Source: Prasinococcaceae sp. CCMP 1430
Lineage: Eukaryota; Plantae; Prasinodermophyta
Length of the DNA: 64,000 bases
Reading direction: 5' to 3'
Assembly: GCA_013416795.1 (NCBI GenBank)
Contig: RQSC01000017.1
Span: forward strand, 41,576-105,575
A model generated the notes under the pieces. It searched no databases and was not told the DNA's origin. It saw nothing but the letters and a program-made list of their open reading frames with translations. The translations under genes were made by a program, and so were the position numbers. This document shows positions 1 to 10,304 of this stretch, piece after piece (the stretch's first letter is position 1; every line of letters begins with the position of its first letter).

Positions 1-1314
1 GCGCGGCGGACGTGCTGAAGGCCAGCATGGCGCCCAAGGAGGCGCCCGCGCCGGCGCAGCTCGCGGCGCCCGCGCCCAAGGCCGACGCGCCGGCTGCCGG
101 CACGGGCTCCGGCCCATCGAAGCGCGGCTCGCGCGGCGGCGTGCGTCAGAAGGAGAAGCAGGAGCGCGCGGCAGCCAGGCAGGCACAGGCGACCCAGGGT
201 GGCGCGGCCAAGGCCTGGCCCGCGCAGCAGCAGCAGCCGCCGCAGCAGCAGCCAGCCGCGAGCGCGCCCCAGGTGGCGCAGCAGATGCAGCAGATGCAGA
301 TCGGCAGCGCGCCGCAGCAGCCGCAGCAGCCTCAGCAGCCTCAGCAGCCCGCCCCCGCCCAGCCCGCGCCCGCGCAGGCAGGCGCGCCCGCATCGGACCC
401 CATCGTGCCGGCGCCCAAGGCGGCCGTCTCGGGCGCCCCGGCGGCCAGCGCCGGCCGCGCCGGACGCGCAGGCCGCTGCGTCTGCCGCGCCGGCCGCTGC
501 CGCGGCCGCGCCCGCCTCGCAGGCAGCTCCACCCGCTACCGCGCAGACATTCACTGCACCCACCTCGCTGGCGCCGCAATTTGGCTTCGCCCAGCAGCCG
601 GGCTTCCAGAACGCGGCGGCCCCGCAGCAGGGCGCCGCGGCCGCGAACGCCAGCAAGTTCAACGGCGCGGACGCTGGTGGGGCGCCCCCGACCTCGCGGG
701 CTCAGCCCCCGCGCTCGGCGGCGCCCCAGCAGGGCATGCAGGGCATGATGCCACAGGCCGGCATGTTCCCACCGGCCGCGGGTGGCTACCCGGGCGCGCT
801 CGCCGCGGGTCAGTACTACGCGCCCCACGCGTTCTACGGGGCGCCGCCCGGCATGTACGCCATGCCAGGAATGCACGCGATGCCCTACGGCGGATACGCG
901 CCGCCACCGCCGTCTGGGCAGCACGCTGGCGCTGGCTACCCCCAGCCTCACGCTGGTGCGATGGGCCCCAAGTATGGAGCCATGGGCGTGCCACCTGGCA
1001 TGCAGATACACCCTGCCGCACAGCAGGCGGCGCAGGCCGCCCAGGCGCAGTCGGCAGCTGGCGCCGCTGCGTTCGGTGGCGCCCTACCGCGCACCGGCGC
1101 GCCCGCTGGCAACGCCGCCGCTCCCGCCAACGGCGTGGGGGCAGGCGGCTCGCAGTTCGAGCGCCAGGGCGGTATGGGTGGCCAGAGGCAGGCGCAGGGT
1201 GGTGCGCAGCAGCCCTTCGCGTCGGGCTCTCCCGGCTTCTATGGTGCGTCGTACGGCATGTTTGCGCAGCCTCCGGCCGCCGGTGGCTACCCTGCCGCGG
1301 GCCAGCAGCGCTGA
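1..1314 (+). CDS. 3' part of a Gln/Pro/Ala/Gly-rich low-complexity protein (5' end outside window; apparent +1 frameshift near 453)
   Basis: The frame of ORF 12.. reads as protein (KEKQERAAARQAQ, polyQ/P) to about 452. The frame of ORF 199..1314 then continues as protein (APDAQAAASAAP...GQYYAPHAFYGAPPGMYAMPGMHAMPYGGY) to TGA 1312-1314. No recognisable globular domain. Confidence 0.6.
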
Positions 1315-1560
1315 ATACGCGGAAGACCATTGGATATCCGCGCCGCGACGCATGCGATCGTTCGCGCTCGGCACATGCATACATACCCCGAGCGAGAAGA
1401 TGCAGGCACTCTAGGCTGCCCGCACAGACCGCTCTGTTGAGACGCATGATAAAACATCTGCTGCAGTTCACGCGCCCAACGAGTACGTGATTCATACTCA
1501 GTATACTCGCCTGGCAGCGGCGCGTCTATTTGAGGGACGGGAGAGAGAGCAGGGAAGAGG

Positions 1561-1638: not shown

Positions 1639-4095
1639 TCATTCCAGTGATCTGCGCGCCTTGATGGGCGACCTCAAGAGGCCAAACACCTCCGGCACAT
1701 CGTGGCGCTCGTAGTCTCCTGTTCGCTTGTGCGGCGTGAGCGGATGGCCACTCCCACGCGCGCCAGTAGGCTCGTCGTCGCTTTGCTGCGCGTAGCAGCG
1801 CGCACAGAGGTCGTAGTCGGCGCGTGCACGGCCCTCGAAGCGCGCCCCCTCGAAGTCGCGCGCGCCGCCGCAGTCGCAGAAGCAGGTGAGTTGGCGCCCG
1901 CGCATGACGTACTCGAAGGTGCGCGCGACGCTACACTTGCAGTTGGTGTACGCGTCCTCGATGCGCACCTGCTCCACGCCGAGGGCCTCGAACAGCAAGC
2001 AGAGGTGCTTGCGCCGCACCGCGCCCGGCCGGCGCAGCTCCTTCTCCCACAGAGCGTCTGCAGTTGCGCGCAGGCGCTCCACACGCGCGGCCAAGGCACG
2101 AGCCACCCGCGGCTGCGCGGCGGGCTCGTGCTCTTTTCGCGGCGTGACCACCACGATGCTCCCGCTCGTCACGCCCGCCTCCACCAGTGTCCTCATGTCG
2201 AGCTCGCAGCTGCCTGCGATGGCCTTCCGCGCGGCAAACTCGCTGTCCCACGCGCAAGGTGTGCCCTCAATGTACGCGCTGTAGTGCTCGTAGCGTCGGC
2301 CAGCCCGGGCGTGGGAGTCCGCGCACACGACCTTGCGCGCGCCCCACCCGGCACGTCCCTGCCGCTGGCTACGCACGAGCGACAGAAGCTGAGACACGCT
2401 GGCGGTGCGCGGCAGGATGGCGTGGCATAGAAAACTCAGCGCTGGTTCGCGGGTGGCGAACCTTTCGGTGAGAGTGCCCGCGTGCGTACGATCAAGGCCG
2501 TCGATGGCCGCGTCGCCGCTCGGGTGGCCGCCACCCGCCTCGACAAACTTGACGAAGACACTTACGTCCTCAGCAGGGTCGTAGGGAAGCAGCGTCCGCT
2601 GCAGCCCCTCCGCGTCAGCCTCGTCGTAGCCGCCCTCACCCGAGGCGGACGACGCCCCAGGATAGTGGTCATCTCTCGCAGCGACCACGGCAGCCACGGC
2701 GGCGGCGGCGATCCGAGAGGTGCCGCTTGTGCCGCTTGTGCCGCTGCCGCTTCCCGGTGCATCATCGACGCTGTCTTCGAAGCTCGGCGAGCGCGCCAGG
2801 CATGACTCTGGCGGCATTGCCCCTCGACCGCGCGGGCTCGCCGCCGCGAAGGGGCCCCTGCCTTGCACCTCCTCGCACGCGGCAGGCGCCTTGCCGACGC
2901 AATCAGGGCGCTCGGCCGCGCACTCGCCCTCAACCTCTCCCAGCACGACGCGCTCCGCGCCGGACTGCGCCAGTCGCGTCGCGTGCGCCAGTCCCACCGC
3001 GGGCCTGTTCACAGTCTCGACCAGCACGCGAAAGCGGAACTCGTGCTTGTGCTGACGGTAGTTTGTGAGCAGCTGCAGGAGCGGGCCCTTGGCATTGGCC
3101 CCACTGGCTTCGCCCACTCCGAGCGGCAGTATGTCGCGCGGCCGCAGCGCGCAATTGTCACGGGGGACGCTGAAGCCCCACAGCCGCACGCCGTCGGCGG
3201 GCGCGCCCACCTTCTCCGCCACGGCAGCGACGATCTCTTCCGCGCTGGCGATGAGCGGCACGACAACAACGCTCCGATGGACGCCGCCTTTGCCCTGTGG
3301 CGCGTCCCGCGGCGCGGCGCCATCGAAGCCGCTGATGTCGGCGACGCCAAGGCCCACGTGCGCGGCCATGTCGGCGGCAGTGACGAGCTCCAGCGTCGCG
3401 TACCGCAGGCAGACGAGGGCGCGCAGGCGGAGCGCGCCTGTGTCATCGAGGAAGCCGGAGGCGGGATTGCAGACTGTCTCGAGGCTCGCGAGCTTGTGCG
3501 TGCCCCAGCTGGTGCGCCCCGCGCGGAACCCGTAAGGGTTGCGTGGCGACCAGCGCACGGAGCGGGCCGGGTCGGTGCGGTGCACGACCTCGAGGGTGAA
3601 GCCCGCGCTGGTGATGAATCCTGCGGGGCGCTCGGCTGGCCTGTGCGTGGCGAGGTAGAGGCTCAAGTGGCTCCCGTCGGCGCTGCTCTGCCGCGGGTTG
3701 CCCCGCGGGTCGAGGTGGAGCTGGAACGTGTGCGCGTCGCCGCGGAAGACGGCGCTGAACGGCGGCGAGACGATCCTCTCCGCGCCGCGCGAGGCGAAGT
3801 CGGAGACGTCCCAGGTGTACGTGGCGGTGAGATTGTTGTCGTTGTCGTCGATGTACAGCCGCCGCCAGTCGCCGCCGTACGAGTTGTGCACGTCGCGCGC
3901 GTCCCTCAGGTGCGGCCAGCGCCGCAGGCAGTGCGCCTTCCACAGCGCGCCGCGGCCGGCGTCGGCGTGCGCGCACCACGCGCGGCACACGCACGACGCG
4001 GCGCGCAGCGAGTCGGCGTCGAGGAACGACATGATGTGTCCCACCAGCTCGTCCGGGAGGCGCGCCGCCCGCGCGCGCGCGCCGCGCTCGCGCAC
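1639..4095 (-). CDS. F-box + MATH/TRAF + USP7-type ubiquitin-like domains + UBA-like + degenerate ZZ zinc finger protein (true start uncertain)
   Basis: F-box: LPDELVGHIMSFLDADSLRAASCVCRAW. MATH: TYTWDVSDF...FQLHLDPRGN...HLSLYL...SWGTHKLASL...GFLDDTGALRLRALV. UBL-like: GVRLWGFS..NCALRP, EDVSVFVKF, LSFLCH. UBA-like: LFEALGVEQVRIEDAYTNCKCSVARTFEYV. ZZ-like: CFCDCG...DYDLCARCY. Confidence 0.8.
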   Translation of the reverse strand: MRERGARARAARLPDELVGHIMSFLDADSLRAASCVCRAWCAHADAGRGALWKAHCLRRWPHLRDARDVHNSYGGDWRRLYIDDNDNNLTATYTWDVSDFASRGAERIVSPPFSAVFRGDAHTFQLHLDPRGNPRQSSADGSHLSLYLATHRPAERPAGFITSAGFTLEVVHRTDPARSVRWSPRNPYGFRAGRTSWGTHKLASLETVCNPASGFLDDTGALRLRALVCLRYATLELVTAADMAAHVGLGVADISGFDGAAPRDAPQGKGGVHRSVVVVPLIASAEEIVAAVAEKVGAPADGVRLWGFSVPRDNCALRPRDILPLGVGEASGANAKGPLLQLLTNYRQHKHEFRFRVLVETVNRPAVGLAHATRLAQSGAERVVLGEVEGECAAERPDCVGKAPAACEEVQGRGPFAAASPRGRGAMPPESCLARSPSFEDSVDDAPGSGSGTSGTSGTSRIAAAAVAAVVAARDDHYPGASSASGEGGYDEADAEGLQRTLLPYDPAEDVSVFVKFVEAGGGHPSGDAAIDGLDRTHAGTLTERFATREPALSFLCHAILPRTASVSQLLSLVRSQRQGRAGWGARKVVCADSHARAGRRYEHYSAYIEGTPCAWDSEFAARKAIAGSCELDMRTLVEAGVTSGSIVVVTPRKEHEPAAQPRVARALAARVERLRATADALWEKELRRPGAVRRKHLCLLFEALGVEQVRIEDAYTNCKCSVARTFEYVMRGRQLTCFCDCGGARDFEGARFEGRARADYDLCARCYAQQSDDEPTGARGSGHPLTPHKRTGDYERHDVPEVFGLLRSPIKARRSLE

Positions 4096-4999
4096 GCCGC
4101 GAGAGCGCGCGCGCGCGCGCGCGCGGGGGGGGGGGAGGGGAAAACCCGCCCGCTCGCTCCCCCTCGCCCGCCCGCTCGCGTTCGCCAGGGACGGGCGTCC
4201 AAGGCGGGAGGAAGGGAGGCGGTGGTGAGGGGGGGGGGAGGCGAAGGGGCCCCGCGCGCGCCCTGTGGCGACACGGGCACGCGCGCAGCCCCTGCCCCGC
4301 CCGTACGAATCGCATGCGTTCTGATATACCCCTCTTTTTGTTTTCCCGCCAGCGCGCGCGCGGCGCCTTCCCCCGCCCGGAAAACCCCAGCAAAAGCCGT
4401 AATAATGCCGGGAGGTTTAGGTTTGGCGGAAGCGCCGCCGAAACGCACGCGTCGTCCGGCAAACGGCCTGCTTTCCCTTTTCATTGTGACGTACAGTCCT
4501 TTTTTTCCTTTTTTACGGAACGGAGTGAATGCGGCCAGTGGTACAGCACCGTCTGACTGATGGAGGCTGCCGCGTGCGGAGCGGCCATGACCATGCGTGG
4601 CGCCGAGGGGAAAAAGGATTGGGGTTTGATGCGTAGGGTTAACGCTTCGCGCCGCGCCGCCGCCGCCGGGCGCGCGCGCGCGCGCGGGGCGGTCGACGGG
4701 TGTTGGCGTTTTCGGTAGAATATTCCGCGTTTTGTGCGGGCGTACCGATGTCTTATCGCATCCTCAAAGGGATTTCTATTTCGCGTGAAAGGAGAATTCG
4801 ATGTGGACTTCAGGGGGAAAAGATGAATAAAGATGCGGTGCGCGCGCGCGCGCGCCGCGTCGCCACAACGCCGCGCGCGCACCCGCTGTCGAGGGGGCAG
4901 AGTCGTCGTGGGCGCACTGGTGGGCGATACCGCGGGCGCGGGGTGGGGGCCGGGCGAGGCGCACGCGGCCCTCCCGAGGGAAAGTTTCGGGCGGGGAGG

Positions 5000-6130
5000 A
5001 TGGCGTCGGCGGTGGTGGCGCCGGCCGAGGCGCGCGCGGCGCCGCTGCTCGCGACGGCGTCGCCGCTCGCCGCCCTGCACCAGCACCAGTATGAGCAGCA
5101 GCAGAAGCAGCAGCAGCACCGCCAGGAGCAGGAGCGGCAGTGGCAGCAGCAGCAGCGGCAGCGGCGGCAGGAGGAGGAGGAGCAGGAGGAGGAGCGAAAG
5201 CAGAAGAACGCGCAGCCCCTACCGGAGCTCCCGGCGGCGTGCTGGCAGGGGGTCTTTCGCCACCTGCGCACGGGCTCGCAGGCGGTCATCGTCGCGTCGG
5301 TGTGCCGCGAGTGGCGCGCGCTCATGCTCGAGCGGCCGCAAAAGCCCTCCCTCGGCAATGAGCAGCAGGGCGGCGCGTGCGCGGCGGGGGCGCGCGGGGC
5401 CGGCGGCGCGGGAAGCAGTAGTGGGTTGGTCGGCTGGTGCGACGCCGATGACGACGTCGTATGCGAGGACGTGTGCGGCGCGCTCGCGCCCCATCTCAGG
5501 TTTGCGTTCCCGGGGCACAGGCGCCACGCGGTGCGCTCCTTCCCGGGCCCCCCGCCCGCCGTGCTGCTGCGCACCGCCGAGGCGGGCAACATCTCGGCGT
5601 GCGTCTGCCTGGCCACTTGGAATGAGCTGAGCGCCCAGGGGAGCGCGCAAGAGGTGCGTGCGCCTGCGCGCCCGTCAAAGTGTGCCAAACGCGGCACGCT
5701 GCCGACGCGCCCGGGTGGTGCCCCGCGCGCGCCTGCGCGCCCTGGTCTGGCGTCGCCCAAGCGAAAGTCGCTGACCTGCGCGGCCGTCCGCGCGTGCCCC
5801 CGTGAAACGCAGGCGCTGCGCCTCCGCAGGCGCGCGGCGCGCCTCGGGCACGCGCCGAGCCAGCTCATGGTCGGCCGGTACTTCGCAGAGGAGGGCAGCC
5901 CCGCCGAGGCCGCGATCTGGCTGCAGCGCTGCGCGGCCAACCGCGCCAGCAGCAGGGGCGACCGCGCCGCTGCAGCCATGATGCTCGGCTACTTGTGCCT
6001 GGACCAGGAGACCACGTACGGGCACAACACGAACTCGGAGGCGTGCGAGTGGTTCAAGCTCGCGAGGGACAGCGGCAGCGCCGACGCGGAGAAGGTGCTC
6101 GGCACGCTGTGGTCCACTGGACAATATTGA
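5000..6130 (+). CDS. F-box-like + SEL1-like repeat protein (intron 5654-5812)
   Basis: LPELPAACWQGVFRHL...VASVCREWR F-box. SEL1-like repeats LGHAPSQLMVGRYF, AAIWLQRCA, AAMMLGYL, EACEWFKLARDSGSADAEKVLG. GTGCG...CTGAC...CGCAG intron. Confidence 0.75.
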   Translation: MASAVVAPAEARAAPLLATASPLAALHQHQYEQQQKQQQHRQEQERQWQQQQRQRRQEEEEQEEERKQKNAQPLPELPAACWQGVFRHLRTGSQAVIVASVCREWRALMLERPQKPSLGNEQQGGACAAGARGAGGAGSSSGLVGWCDADDDVVCEDVCGALAPHLRFAFPGHRRHAVRSFPGPPPAVLLRTAEAGNISACVCLATWNELSAQGSAQEVRAPARPSKCAKRGTLPTRPGGAPRAPARPGLASPKRKSLTCAAVRACPRETQALRLRRRAARLGHAPSQLMVGRYFAEEGSPAEAAIWLQRCAANRASSRGDRAAAAMMLGYLCLDQETTYGHNTNSEACEWFKLARDSGSADAEKVLGTLWSTGQY

Positions 6131-6274: not shown

Positions 6275-8267
6275 CTACTCGTCGCCCTTGCGCTTGGCCG
6301 CGTACGCGTTGACGAGCTCCTTCTGCGTCTGCTGCGACACCGCCGCGTGGTGCGCGTACGTCATGGTGAACTCGCCCTTGCCCTGCGTCTGCGAACGCAG
6401 GTCGGTCGAGTAGCCGAACATGTTGTTCAGCGGCACGGTGGCGTTCACGACGACGTCGGACTCGTTGGACTCGCTGCCCACGATGGTGCCGTTGCGCTTG
6501 TTCAGGGAGCCGATGACCGAGCCCTGGAACTCAGTGGGCGCGGTCACCTCGACGTCCATCACTGGCTCAAGCACCACCGGGTCGGAGCTGCTGTACGCCA
6601 TGCGGAAGCCGCCCTGCGCAGCAAGCCGGAACGCAATGTCGTTGGAGTCGACGACGTGGCTGGCGCCGTCAGTGAGCACGAAGCGCACGCCCTGCACCTC
6701 GTGGCCCACCAGGAAGCCCGAGTTGCACGCTTCGCGGAAGCCCTTCTCGATGGACTGGATGAATTGCGGCGGGATGGGATTGCCCACGACCTCGTTCTCA
6801 AACTCGATCTCGGCCGAGGCGAGGCCCTCCTCGGTCAGGATGGGTTCGATGCGGCCCTGCACCTTGCCGAATTGTCCCGAGCCGCCCGACTGCTTCTTGT
6901 GCGTGTAGTCGAACGTCGCGCCCTGGCGAATGGTCTCGCGGAAGTTCACGCGCGGCTTGCCGCTCACCACCCCGACGTTGTATTCGCGATTCATGCGCTC
7001 GATGTAGATCTCTAGGTGGAGCTCGCCCATCCCCGAGATGATTGTCTGGTTGCTGTCCGGGTCGAGGTGCACGCGGAAGGTGGGGTCCTCGCGCTGGAAG
7101 CGCCCGAGCGCCTTGGAGAAGTTCGCGGCGCCCGACTGGTCCTTGGGCGACACCGCGAGCGACATCACCGGGTCAGGCGTGTGCATTGATGTCATCGCGT
7201 AGTCGACCTTGCCGTCGGTGAAGGAATCGCCCGACGCGCAGTCCACGCCGAACATCGCCACGATGTCGCCAGCCTTGGCCTCGGTGATGTCCTCCATCTC
7301 GTCCGAGTGCATGCGCACCAGCCGCGGAATCTTCACGCGCTTTCGGCTCTTCACGTTAGTGATGAAGTCGCCCTTCTTGAGCGTGCCGCTGTACAAGCGC
7401 ATGTACGTCAGCTGGCCGAACTTGCCGTCCTCGAGCTTGAATGCAAGGGCCACGGTGTTGGACGAGGCATCGCACGGCAGCACGAGCTCCTTCTCATCGT
7501 TGGCCACATCGAGCGCCTTGTTCTCCGCGTCGTTAGGCGCGGGAAGGTAGTCGACCACGCCGTCGAGCAACAGCTGCACGCCCTTGTTCTTGAAGGCGGA
7601 GCCCATCATGACGGGCGTGAAATCGAGGCTCAGCGTCGCGCGACGAATGGATTCGCGCAGCTGCTGCGGCGTTGGGTCCTCGCCCTCCAGGTAGATCTCC
7701 CCCATGGCATCGTCCACCTCGGCGAGCGTCTCAACGAGCTCGGCGCGTGCCTCGGTGGCGCGGTCTGCGTGGTGGCGCAGCATGGGCGAGCGCGGGCGGG
7801 GGGGGGGGGGAGGACGCGTCAGATGCGCGCGTCGGGAGCGTGCGCGCGCGGGTGCGCACGCCCATATCTATCCGCACTGCCGGAAACATGCGCAGCCGCT
7901 CGCGCTCGCGCGCAGCACGCACCCTTGAGGTCGTCGGGAATGGGCTCGCGGCGCACGTCGTCGCCGCGAGGGCCGTCAAAGTACACTGCTTCCATGCTCA
8001 CAAGGTCCACCACGCCTTGATGCGCGTCCTCGAGGCCGATCGGGATCTGCACGGCCGCCGCCGTGTGCTTAAGCTTGTCGCGAAGCTGCTGCATGACGCC
8101 AAAGGGGTCGGCGCCCATGCGATCGCACTTGTTGACAAAGCACAAGCGCGGCACGTCGTAGCGGCGCATCTGGCGGTCGACGGTGATTGACTGCGACTGC
8201 ACGCCGCCGACCGAACACAGCACCAGCACCGCGCCGTCGAGCACGCGCAGCGCACGCTCCACCTCCA

Positions 8268-8298
<31 letters not shown>

Positions 8299-8749
8299 AA
8301 TGTTGATCGCGGTGTCTCCCCACGAGCAGTACGTCGCAGCGGACTTGATGGTGATGCCCTTCTCGCGCTCGAGGTCCATCGAGTCCATCTTGGCGCCCAC
8401 GCCGTCCTTACCGCGCACCTCGTGGATAGCGCGGATGCGGCCCGTGTAGTACAGGATGCGCTCCGTCAGGGTTGTCTTGCCGCTGCAGGCAAAGCGTTGG
8501 GCGCGACGTGAGTCAGTCAGCGAGCGGTGGCGCGATGCGCGCACGCGCGCGCACAGCGGCGGCGGCGGCGACGGCGGCAGACACGGCAACGGCGGCGAAG
8601 ACGCACCTGTCGATGTGCGCACTGATGCCGATGTTCCGCATCTTCTCGAGGTAATCGGCGGACGCCGAGGCCGTCGACGACAGGCCGCGCGGGCCGCCGG
8701 CCGCGAGCGGCGAGCTGACGCCCCAGGGCGCAAGCGCGCGCGAAAGCAT
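6275..8749 (-). CDS. GFM1: Mitochondrial elongation factor G (exons 8749-8607, 8482-7923, 7764-6275)
   Basis: [10 protein letters not shown]|[70 protein letters not shown]-terminal mitochondrial-type presequence. Canonical splice sites restore the frame. Confidence 0.95.
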
Positions 8750-8787
8750 CGCACGCGCGCCGAACGCGCCGAGCGCCCCCGCCGCCC

Positions 8788-8949
8788 NNNNNNNNNNNNN
8801 NNNNNNNNNNNNNNNNNNNNNNNNNNNNNNNNNNNNNNNNNNNNNNNNNNNNNNNNNNNNNNNNNNNNNNNNNNNNNNNNNNNNNNNNNNNNNNNNNNNN
8901 NNNNNNNNNNNNNNNNNNNNNNNNNNNNNNNNNNNNNNNNNNNNNNNNN
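8788..8949. other. Assembly gap (N run)
   Basis: Run of n. Confidence 1.
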
Positions 8950-9035
8950 GGGCGCGCCGCGGAGGGGCGCCCCGGCGGGGCGCGTGCGCGCGCGGCGGGT
9001 GGGTAGTGTACAGGTGCGGGGCGGGCTGAGCCCCA

Positions 9036-10304
9036 CTAGCGTCGGAAGATGGCGCGCAGCAGCGCTCTCAAGAGCGAAACGAGCGCTACGGCTGCGTAGC
9101 GCACGGCGAAGTTCGCGACGACCCTGGCGACAGCTGCGAGAGCACCGACAACCACTGCAGACACCGCCTCGCTCATCGCACGCGCGTCGTCGTGCGCCTT
9201 GTCGCCACCCTCGCTGCTGCGGCTAGCGCTGCCCGCACTCGTCCGCGCACCTGGCCCTCCCACCTGCCGCCTCTGCACGTCGCGCTGTACTCTTCCGTTC
9301 GCGTAGCGGCGCTCGGTTGTCACGGTGACAAACTGGCGGCCTGTGCTGTCGTACGAGGTCTCCTCATATACACGGGTCGACACCACGCCAGGGCCGTGCT
9401 GCATCTGTCGGGACATGTCCTGAGCATGTGTGACGGGTCAGGCTTGCCGTCCGCACGTGCGCGCGTGGCGCCCGGGCGCAGCAGCTGGGCAGATAGAGCG
9501 CCACGCACCTCGAACAATTGCCGCGCAGATTTCCCAAACACCGCGCGAAAGAGTGCCTCGGCCTGCTCAGGAGTCATGCGGAAGGGGTCGGCCTGTTGGC
9601 GGTGGAATTGCCACGCGTCCTGCCGGCGCCGCCACTCCTCGTACTGCTGCTGCTCGCGCGTGCGGTACGCGCCATCCTGCTGCGCTCGCCGGCGCGAGTC
9701 CTCCCATTCGCGGCGGTACTGCCGAATGCCGCCGATGCGTGAGGTGCGCCACGATTCGTCAGAGCGCGAGGTGCCTGCAGGCATCCGAGCGGGCGCGGGC
9801 GCGGCCACAGGCGAGCACACGCGGCTGCAGGCGGGGTGTGCGCACCTGGTAATCGTTCCCCCCACGCTGCTGCTGCTGCTGCGCCCCTGAGCGTTGCGAC
9901 TGGCGCTGCTGCGATTCCCACTGTGCGCGCCGCTGGCGCGCCGCGGCGTCTGCTGCCCGAGAGCGCTCCCAGCGCGCGCGCGCGGCCGGGTCGGTGGCAA
10001 TGGCGTACGCCTCGGAGGCGCGCTTGAACTTGGCCTCTGCTGCCGCGCGCTCCGCCGCGCTGTCGTTGGAGTGTCGGTCGGGATGCCACTTCAACGCTTC
10101 TCGTCTGTACGCCTTCTTCAGCTCAGTAGGCGTCGCCGAGCGGCTCACGCCAAGCACCTTGTAGGGGTCGTCGACCTCCTCGTCGCGGGTCGCGGCGGCT
10201 GCATACGAACGCGCCTGCGCGCCATACGCCGGCGCTTGCGCGCGCGCATGCGCGTGCTCCGGCCCGAGGCTGGCAGCACGGACTGCGCCGCCTCGCCCGA
10301 GCGC
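9036..10304 (-). CDS. DnaJ (J-domain) protein with C-terminal hydrophobic segment; multi-exon, 5' end uncertain (possible ATG 10540)
   Basis: [33 protein letters not shown]...[18 protein letters not shown]. Introns near 9846-9776 and 9509-9419 join to ...[33 protein letters not shown]. Confidence 0.85.

What the first reader, a model, noticed from the sequence alone, without database searches (positions are those of the whole stretch)
1639..4095. F-box protein built on a USP7/UBP12-like scaffold with the deubiquitinase domain missing
Seen: F-box, then MATH, then segments (HVGLGVAD..EEIVAAVAEKVG..GVRLWGFS..NCALRP; LPYDPAEDVSVFVKF..LSFLCHAILP..SVSQLL), then UBA-like and a one-zinc ZZ-like finger. 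Knowledge: USP7/UBP12/13 are MATH-USP catalytic-UBL1-5, and their UBL1/2 carry, from recall, QIRLW..NGTKRP and HDVMLFLK..LNYCGH. Inference: MATH is joined directly to the UBLs with no Cys/His-box protease, and an F-box is added. This would be an SCF adaptor that could recognise USP7-type clients (MATH P/AxxS, UBL2 KxxxK motifs) and ubiquitinate rather than rescue them. I know of no described protein with this architecture.
Basis: partly seen in the sequence, partly recalled or inferred. Interest (0 to 1): 0.78.

Follow-up and report, generated by a model that had tools for sequence, protein, structure and literature searches.

The report
F-box protein with USP7-like docking domains
This green-alga gene encodes a ubiquitin-ligase adaptor (F-box protein) whose body copies the substrate-docking parts of the deubiquitinase USP7 but has no enzyme core; it is a divergent member of an unstudied family that is also conserved in oomycetes and a brown alga.

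Summary
The 818-codon ORF at 1639-4095 (minus strand) encodes these parts in order:
- a canonical F-box;
- a MATH domain;
- directly after it, a tandem of two ubiquitin-like domains that match human USP7 UBL1-UBL2 specifically (family profile E 1.6e-12; Foldseek E 3.5e-9; VIA-align Z 20, against under 10 for any other UBL);
- a long helix;
- a small three-helix bundle, only weakly UBA-like;
- a ZZ finger that has lost its second zinc site.

No USP catalytic domain and no UBL3-5 are present.

The architecture is real, but it is not unique. The same domain order is conserved in more than 50 database proteins from oomycetes, in Ectocarpus and in metagenomes, some auto-named "ubiquitin carboxyl-terminal hydrolase and/or F-box protein". 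I found no paper on them.

The idea that it recognises USP7's own clients is not supported. The residues USP7 uses for P/AxxS and K-rich motifs (D164; D758/E759/D764) are S and A/G/S here.

The gene looks functional: pN/pS is 0.28 against a 99% identical TARA copy. Its start codon is unresolved, and a 5' intron is likely. The most likely function is an SCF substrate receptor.

The parts
1639..4095 (-). Main open reading frame (818 codons plus stop). Probably exon 2 of the gene from nt 4086 downward.
   Evidence: A copy 99% identical at protein level lies on a TARA metagenome scaffold. pN/pS 0.28, p=0.0065.
3922..4065 (-). F-box (aa 11-58), canonical LPxE...L...CxxW pattern.
   Evidence: Pfam F-box-like E 4e-11 and F-box E 1.7e-7. 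Weak PDB sequence matches to GID2 and beta-TrCP F-boxes.
3442..3822 (-). MATH/TRAF-like domain (aa 92-218). Groove residues Y147, F166, W197-G198 and H200 are invariant or nearly invariant in the family.
   Evidence: Pfam MATH_2 E 2e-11. Family MATH profile matches SPOP (E 2e-9) and USP7 (E 5e-8) MATH domains. Invariant columns.
3013..3408 (-). USP7-type UBL1 (about aa 230-361). Begins right after MATH with the conserved HxG motif.
   Evidence: profile against USP7 567-771; structure.
2590..3006 (-). Low-complexity, predicted disordered insert between UBL1 and UBL2 (aa 364-502). Absent from the compact oomycete members.
   Evidence: pLDDT under 50 for model residues 140-278. Alignment gaps. 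Two of the 8 amino-acid differences from the TARA copy lie here.
2137..2568 (-). USP7-type UBL2 (about aa 510-653) with two lineage-specific loops. The acidic K-motif patch of USP7 is not conserved.
2032..2115 (-). Long helix after UBL2 (aa 661-688). Its start aligns with the USP7 UBL2-UBL3 linker, up to about residue 793.
1894..2022 (-). Three-helix bundle, UBA-like at fold level only (aa 692-734).
   Evidence: pLDDT above 90. UBA domains of Dcn1, HBS1L, Ede1, HHR23A, Ddi1 and EDD at Z 4.3-4.8. No significant sequence match.
1696..1890 (-). Degenerate ZZ finger (aa 736-800). The first zinc site is kept in altered form (C740, C742 in place of C743, C764, C767). The second site is lost (G755, R758). 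Acidic D741, D760 and D762 are kept.
   Evidence: Pfam ZZ E 0.07. Family C-terminal profile against KCMF1 ZZ E 1.7e-12 and p62 ZZ E 3.7e-10. Fold match to KCMF1 Z 7.2, rmsd 2.0 A. Residues.
4449..4484 (-). Candidate first exon (ATG plus 11 codons), followed by a GTGCGT donor. Unverified, and one of several in-frame options.
   Evidence: The same donor hexamer is seen in the EF-G intron.
4087..4448 (-). Candidate 5' intron ending in a C-rich tract and AG at 4088-4087. Unverified.

Best explanation
The gene encodes a functional F-box protein of an uncharacterised family. Its domain order is F-box, MATH, USP7-type UBL1-UBL2, long helix, small UBA-like bundle, ZZ.

The most likely mechanism is as follows. 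The F-box plugs into SKP1-CUL1-RBX1 (inferred from the motif). The MATH groove docks a short linear motif of a substrate (inferred from the invariant groove residues). The rigid UBL1-UBL2 tandem acts as a spacer or second docking surface. In most family members the C-terminal ZZ finger, which is closest to the KCMF1/p62/PRT1 type, reads a free N-terminus. In this alga the ZZ has lost one zinc site, so MATH and UBL1-2 probably carry the recognition.

The MATH plus UBL1-2 pair is most simply explained as a USP7-like gene that lost its catalytic core and UBL3-5 and gained an F-box and a ZZ.

Shown: the domains, their order, the absence of a protease domain, family conservation and purifying selection. 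Inferred: SKP1 binding, ligase function, substrates and evolutionary origin.
For: - Domains.
- USP7 UBL1-2 homology: by profile (E 1.6e-12, full-length match to USP7 567-771) and by structure (Foldseek E 3.5e-9; VIA Z 20 against under 10 for other UBLs; ESM Atlas nearest clusters all carry USP7_ICP0_bdg).
- Family: the same order is conserved in more than 50 proteins from oomycetes, Ectocarpus and metagenomes.
- ZZ type.
- MATH groove: invariant residues.
- Constraint: 10 synonymous against 8 non-synonymous differences from the TARA copy, pN/pS 0.28, p=0.0065; 3 of the 8 replacements fall in regions modelled below pLDDT 50.
Against: - No experiment exists for any family member.
- SKP1 binding is untested.
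- The window has no in-frame ATG ahead of the F-box. If translation began at M22 the first half of the F-box would be lost.
- The MATH profile matches SPOP slightly better than USP7, so a USP7 origin of the MATH domain is not shown.
- The ZZ is degenerate in this species.
- Expression could not be checked.
Confidence: 0.6

Rival explanations
1. One reading: an SCF adaptor that recognises the same clients as USP7 (MATH binding P/AxxS motifs, UBL2 binding KxxxK motifs) and ubiquitinates what USP7 rescues. It would be a mirror-image E3 to the DUB.
For: It has the same two docking modules as USP7 in the same order. The W165 equivalent (W197) is invariant. The D764 equivalent is Asp in nearly all oomycete members.
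Against: - In the window protein the D164 equivalent is Ser.
- D758/E759/D764 map to A/G/S. Mutating these three residues disrupted the USP7 UBL1-3 interaction with Pol iota (PMC7873624).
- D758/E759 equivalents are not acidic in the oomycete members either.
- The MATH domain is as close to SPOP as to USP7.
Confidence: 0.12
2. A non-ligase scaffold or decoy ('pseudo-DUB'). The MATH-UBL1-2 body binds partners or competes with USP7, and the F-box is not engaged. This would apply in this alga if translation starts at M22.
For: There is no in-frame ATG upstream in the window. Catalytic-domain-less USP7_ICP0_bdg proteins may also exist in land plants (row 5).
Against: - The F-box is canonical and conserved across the family: 6 of 14 members pass Pfam and others align.
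- The upstream sequence looks like the 3' end of an intron, and several in-frame first exons are possible.
- The TARA copy has a contiguous ATG.
Confidence: 0.12
3. A decaying copy. In this lineage the gene is losing function: degenerate ZZ, large low-complexity inserts, uncertain start.
For: The second zinc site is lost. There are about 140 disordered residues between the UBLs. In 67-70% GC DNA long ORFs arise by chance; for example a 565-aa antisense ORF lies at 2863-4560.
Against: - pN/pS is 0.28, significantly below neutrality.
- Both strains keep 2.4 kb free of stops and frameshifts.
- The folded parts are modelled with pLDDT 80-96.
Confidence: 0.08
4. On origin only: MATH and the UBL1-2 tandem were brought together by independent domain shuffling, not by deletion of the catalytic core from a USP7-like gene.
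For: The MATH profile scores SPOP (40.5 bits) slightly above USP7 (36 bits). No intermediate form was found.
Against: - Among solved structures every match to the two-domain unit (Z 18-20) was USP7, and the next hits were single UBLs at Z under 10.
- Here it follows MATH in the same N-to-C order as in USP7.
- The match starts at about USP7 residue 562, near the catalytic domain's C-terminal boundary at about residue 560 (from memory), and continues into the UBL2-UBL3 linker.
Confidence: 0.25

Closest known systems
USP7/HAUSP and plant UBP12/UBP13 (MATH - USP catalytic domain - UBL1-5)
   Same: An N-terminal MATH domain followed, in the same order, by a UBL1-UBL2 tandem with the same fold and relative arrangement. 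VIA Z 20, 21% identity, profile E 1.6e-12, covering USP7 residues about 562-793.
   Different: No USP catalytic domain, no UBL3-5 and no C-terminal activating peptide. It carries an F-box in front and a UBA-like bundle plus ZZ behind. The USP7 docking residues D164 and D758/E759/D764 are not conserved.
Oomycete proteins auto-named 'Ubiquitin carboxyl-terminal hydrolase and/or F-box protein' or 'ZZ-type domain-containing protein' (for example Pythium oligandrum TMW68665.1, Thraustotheca clavata OQR91179.1, Aphanomyces invadans XP_008871756.1)
   Same: Same full domain order and alignable over the whole length (23-29% identity). Shared invariant residues in MATH, UBL1, UBL2 and ZZ.
   Different: The oomycete proteins are compact (about 630-740 aa) and have a complete two-zinc ZZ. 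The algal protein has about 140 disordered residues between the UBLs, loops inside UBL2 and a one-zinc ZZ. It lies outside the oomycete and Ectocarpus clades in a quick tree.
SPOP / MATH-BTB (BPM) substrate adaptors of CUL3 ligases
   Same: A MATH domain serves as the substrate-binding module of a cullin-RING ligase adaptor. Best sequence match of the family's MATH profile (E 2e-9).
   Different: The cullin link is an F-box (CUL1 via SKP1), not a BTB domain (CUL3). SPOP has no UBLs and no ZZ.
ZZ-domain N-degron readers (KCMF1, p62/SQSTM1, PRT1, BIG/UBR4, HERC2)
   Same: The family's ZZ matches these best (KCMF1 E 1.7e-12) and keeps the CD..C and DYDLC acidic residues.
   Different: In the window protein the second zinc site is missing. 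None of these readers is an F-box protein.

Membership tests
F-box proteins (SCF substrate receptors) | F-box motif of about 45 residues | tested here: met
   Pfam F-box-like E 4e-11 (above the gathering score) and F-box E 1.7e-7.
F-box proteins (SCF substrate receptors) | Binding to SKP1 | not testable with these tools
   Needs yeast two-hybrid or co-IP.
USP7/UBP12-13 deubiquitinases | USP (UCH, PF00443) catalytic domain with Cys and His boxes | tested here: not met
   No UCH hit at E<=1. MATH ends at aa 218 and UBL1 starts at aa 232, leaving no room. None of the scanned family members has the domain.
USP7/UBP12-13 deubiquitinases | N-terminal MATH/TRAF-like domain | tested here: met
   Pfam MATH_2 E 2e-11. 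Profile match to USP7 MATH E 5e-8, though SPOP scores slightly better.
USP7/UBP12-13 deubiquitinases | UBL1-UBL2 tandem (USP7_ICP0_bdg) | tested here: met
   Profile E 1.6e-12. Foldseek E 3.5e-9. VIA Z 20. Pfam PF12436 is sub-threshold in 5 of 14 members and not reported for the window protein itself.
USP7/UBP12-13 deubiquitinases | UBL3-5 (USP7_C2) and C-terminal activating peptide | tested here: not met
   No PF14533 hit. The sequence after UBL2 folds as helices plus ZZ.
USP7/UBP12-13 deubiquitinases | Docking residues D164/W165 (TRAF groove) and D758/E759/D764 (UBL2 acidic patch), as given in PMC7873624 | tested here: not met
   W is kept (W197) but D164 maps to S196. D758/E759/D764 map to A/G/S. 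The mapping comes from sequence alignment and loop shifts are possible.
ZZ-type zinc fingers (N-terminus readers) | Two zinc sites (Cys pairs 1 and 3; Cys pair 2 plus two His) | tested here: not met
   The window has G755 and R758 in place of the second Cys pair, and G743 with a shifted C742. Other family members have all ligands.
ZZ-type zinc fingers (N-terminus readers) | ZZ fold and conserved acidic residues (CD..C, DYDLC) | tested here: met
   KCMF1 Z 7.2, rmsd 2.0 A, 31% identity. D741, D760 and D762 are invariant or nearly so.
UBA domains | Compact three-helix bundle with a ubiquitin-binding loop | tested here: inconclusive
   A bundle is predicted with pLDDT above 90. Several UBA domains match at Z 4.3-4.8 only. 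There is no sequence match and the MGF-type loop is not evident.
Uncharacterised F-box-MATH-UBL1-2-ZZ family (oomycetes, Ectocarpus, metagenomes) | Same domain order, alignable end to end, with shared invariant residues | tested here: met
   The C-terminal half finds family members at E 1e-21 to 1e-4.

The most novel reading that the evidence does not exclude
The family is an SCF-type counterpart of USP7. It would be a cullin-RING ligase receptor that reuses USP7's MATH and UBL1-2 docking scaffold and, in most members, adds a KCMF1/p62-like ZZ. That would make it the first F-box N-degron reader and a built-in antagonist of the USP7/UBP12 pathway in stramenopiles and an early-branching green alga.
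Probability: 0.15. Interest if true: 0.8.

Novelty: new variant of a known kind. Interest (0 to 1): 0.55.

Why it matters
USP7 is one of the best-studied deubiquitinases, and among the solved structures searched here the UBL1-UBL2 tandem matched only USP7. This finding shows that the docking half of USP7, without the enzyme, has been rebuilt into an F-box protein. That protein is conserved in oomycetes (including major crop and fish pathogens), a brown alga and a green picoalga.

This gives a natural test of what MATH plus UBL1-2 do on their own. It also adds a MATH architecture that is missing from the usual eight-family classification (PMC10218331). It points to a possible SCF receptor that reads N-termini through a ZZ finger.

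For genome annotation, the automatic name 'ubiquitin carboxyl-terminal hydrolase' given to these proteins is wrong, because they have no hydrolase domain.

Tried and rejected
- Single-sequence searches of the protein or its post-MATH part against PDB gave no USP7 hit. Pfam gave no USP7_ICP0_bdg hit for the window protein. Homology appeared only with a family profile and with structure.
- The word-indexed protein search with the window protein, and with an alignment led by it, returned only the TARA copy, because low-complexity words filled the candidate list. Re-running with compact oomycete members worked.
- ESM Atlas feature search: no usable hit.
- The profile of the helical region against PDB gave nothing meaningful, so 'UBA' rests on weak fold matches only.
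Expression, the 5' exon and the absence of alternative exons remain untested.
Only the contiguous ORF, by reference, was searched.
- I considered and rejected a hidden catalytic exon. The MATH-UBL1 junction is seamless within one ORF and is conserved in all relatives.
- I considered recent transfer from stramenopiles. The quick tree places the alga's protein outside both stramenopile clades, but the branches are long and the careful tree did not finish.
- A phylogeny against USP7/UBP12 sequences was not possible.
Full report
**What is there.** The window is 67% GC overall and about 70% around the finding. In such DNA long ORFs arise by chance; a 565-aa antisense ORF overlaps this one. ORF length alone is therefore no evidence of a gene.

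The 818-codon ORF at 1639-4095 (minus strand) is nevertheless a real gene:
- Pfam finds an F-box (aa 11-58, E 4e-11) and a MATH domain (aa 92-218, E 2e-11) above their gathering scores.
- A protein 99% identical is called on a TARA Oceans metagenome scaffold.
- Over 816 shared codons the two copies differ at 10 synonymous and 8 non-synonymous sites. This gives pN/pS 0.28, binomial p=0.0065 against neutrality.
- Three of the 8 replacements (residues 437, 463, 527) lie in regions modelled below pLDDT 50. Two more (546, 815) lie in low-confidence loop or tail regions.

Earlier notes of this scan call the genome a marine green picoalga, probably Prasinoderma coloniale. The GC content and the TARA match fit that, but I did not verify it.

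**The middle region.** Single-sequence searches did not reach USP7. An exhaustive phmmer search with aa 225-818 found 19 relatives. By exact look-up these include proteins of Pythium, Aphanomyces, Thraustotheca and Ectocarpus, plus metagenomic ones. Aligned, they show one architecture: F-box, MATH, two conserved blocks, a helical stretch and a ZZ finger. Five of 14 members give sub-threshold Pfam USP7_ICP0_bdg hits between MATH and ZZ.

A profile of the middle region from 11 members matches human USP7 residues 567-771 in one stretch covering the whole profile, E 1.6e-12 to 5e-11. The printed alignment shares these motifs:
- the HxG motif at the start of UBL1;
- (I/V)RLW and RP;
- F(L/V)K...L(N/D)Y(C/L)G;
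- EE..P;
- GDI(I/V)(V/I)F.

The polyubiquitin chains that rank above USP7 in that table are sums of nine weak repeats of a 40-residue UBL match and are not informative.

**Structure.** The AF2 model of aa 225-818, built with a 41-sequence alignment, has pLDDT 80-90 in the folded parts and below 50 in aa 364-502.
- Foldseek against PDB returns 22 USP7 UBL1-2 chains first (E 3.5e-9 to 6e-7). Generic ubiquitin-like domains follow only at E>0.01.
- VIA-align gives Z about 20, rmsd about 3.0 A, about 224 aligned residues and 21% identity, with model 6-450 on USP7 562-793. The best non-USP7 match is a single UBL at Z 9.9.
- The six nearest ESM Atlas rows all carry USP7_ICP0_bdg.

So both UBLs, and their arrangement as a tandem, are of the USP7 type. 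UBL1's first strand (aa 232-238) follows the MATH domain (Pfam end aa 218) almost directly. In USP7 the catalytic domain sits between them; its size, about 350 residues, is from my own knowledge of USP7.

**C-terminal part.** A separate model of aa 657-818 (pLDDT 82) shows a long helix, a three-helix bundle (aa 692-734) and a ZZ-like knuckle.
- The family profile of this part matches KCMF1 ZZ (E 1.7e-12), p62 ZZ (3.7e-10), HERC2, PRT1 and BIG ZZ domains. From their entry titles, all of these are readers of protein N-termini.
- The fold search agrees: KCMF1 Z 7.2, rmsd 2.0 A, 31% identity.
- In the window protein the second Cys pair of the family (columns 755 and 758) is G and R, and C743 is G with a Cys shifted to 742. 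C740, C764 and C767 and the acidic D741, D760 and D762 remain.
- 'One-zinc ZZ-like' is therefore accurate, and it is a peculiarity of this lineage. Its closest relative P0002 and the oomycete proteins have complete ZZ fingers.
- The three-helix bundle aligns with several UBA domains, but only at Z 4.3-4.8 and with no sequence support. It is UBA-like in shape, no more.

**What is missing.** There is no UCH/USP domain and no USP7_C2 (UBL3-5) in this protein or in the relatives scanned.

**How widespread.** A profile search led by compact members returned 56 proteins. Nearly all named ones are from oomycetes: Phytophthora, Pythium, Globisporangium, Lagenidium, Aphanomyces, Saprolegnia, Thraustotheca and Nothophytophthora. 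Their automatic names include 'Ubiquitin carboxyl-terminal hydrolase and/or F-box protein', 'Ubiquitin carboxyl-terminal hydrolase 12' and 'ZZ-type domain-containing protein'.

The architecture is therefore already in databases, and automated pipelines have noticed the USP7 likeness. I found no paper that describes it. The MATH classification quoted in PMC10218331 lists eight families, none with an F-box.

In a quick maximum-likelihood tree the alga's protein, its TARA twin and P0002 fall outside the well-supported oomycete clade and the Ectocarpus-type clade. The tree has long branches, and the careful search did not finish. This gives no sign of a recent transfer from stramenopiles. The phmmer search of 1.84 billion representatives found no close homologue beyond the TARA copy and the unplaced contig protein P0002, so the distribution looks patchy.

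**Function.** The F-box is canonical, so the simplest mechanism is an SCF substrate receptor. The MATH groove residues that align with the SPOP and USP7 binding groove (the LS.YL tyrosine, a Phe, and WG) are invariant or nearly invariant in the family. A peptide-binding MATH is therefore likely.

PMC7873624 states that P/A/ExxS motifs bind through D164/W165 and K/RxKxxxK motifs through D758/E759/D764. Here the equivalents are:
- D164/W165 map to S196/W197 (N-W in oomycetes).
- D758/E759/D764 map to A/G/S. Only the D764 position is Asp in most oomycete members.

These mappings come from sequence alignment and could shift by a residue or two in loops.

**Start of the gene.** The listed ORF begins at a GTG. 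The frame is open for about 113 codons upstream without an ATG, and the first ATG (M22) lies inside the F-box.

The TARA scaffold has a contiguous ATG 15 codons upstream. However, its first 216 bases (54% GC) are unrelated to the window, whereas everything downstream is about 99% identical. Either the metagenome scaffold is chimeric at the (GC)n run or the strains differ there.

In the window the sequence just upstream of the ORF is a C-rich tract followed by AG at 4088-4087. This resembles the 3' end of the intron I located in the neighbouring EF-G gene, whose donor is GTGCGT. An ATG at 4484 followed 12 codons later by GTGCGT would splice in frame to nt 4086. Other in-frame options exist.

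This is a model only. I did not search the joined exons.

**Verdict.** The thing is a real and unusual domain architecture, but it is a divergent member of an existing, unstudied family, not a one-off. Its client specificity cannot be read off from USP7.

Noticed in passing
window 4087-4700 (-) and L001:1-216: The window and the otherwise 99% identical TARA scaffold are unrelated upstream of nt 4093. The scaffold's first 216 bases are 54% GC against about 70% elsewhere. Either the metagenome scaffold is chimeric at a (GC)n run or the strains differ by a rearrangement. The window side looks like the 3' end of an intron.
   Followed up: partly
window 6275-9036 (-): An organellar-type EF-G gene in at least two exons. 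It has an intron at about 7766-7921 (GTGCGT donor, C-rich tract, AG acceptor). A run of N (assembly gap) lies inside its 5' part, at roughly 8750-8900.
   Followed up: partly
window 4700-6130 (+): A divergently oriented ORF with an F-box-looking stretch (LPELPAACWQGVFRHL...CREW) after a Q/E-rich run. It has no significant Pfam hit.
   Followed up: no
window 12-1490 (+): A Q/P/A-rich low-complexity ORF, open in two overlapping frames. The region is conserved at about 99% on the TARA scaffold, where a 527-aa gene is called. No Pfam family matches.
   Followed up: no
L002:91-2850 (protein P0002): The closest relative (33-37% identity, Logan contig from SRR13370223, organism unknown) has an insert of about 120 aa inside its MATH domain and a complete two-zinc ZZ.
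   Followed up: no
ESM Atlas cluster, row 5: A streptophyte cluster of 95 members carries USP7_ICP0_bdg in all members, MATH in about 15%, and no UCH listed. USP7-like scaffolds without the catalytic domain may also exist in land plants, or these may be fragments.
   Followed up: no
window 2863-4560 (+): A 565-aa ORF antisense to the gene. It is a by-product of the high GC content and is not evidence of a second gene.
   Followed up: no
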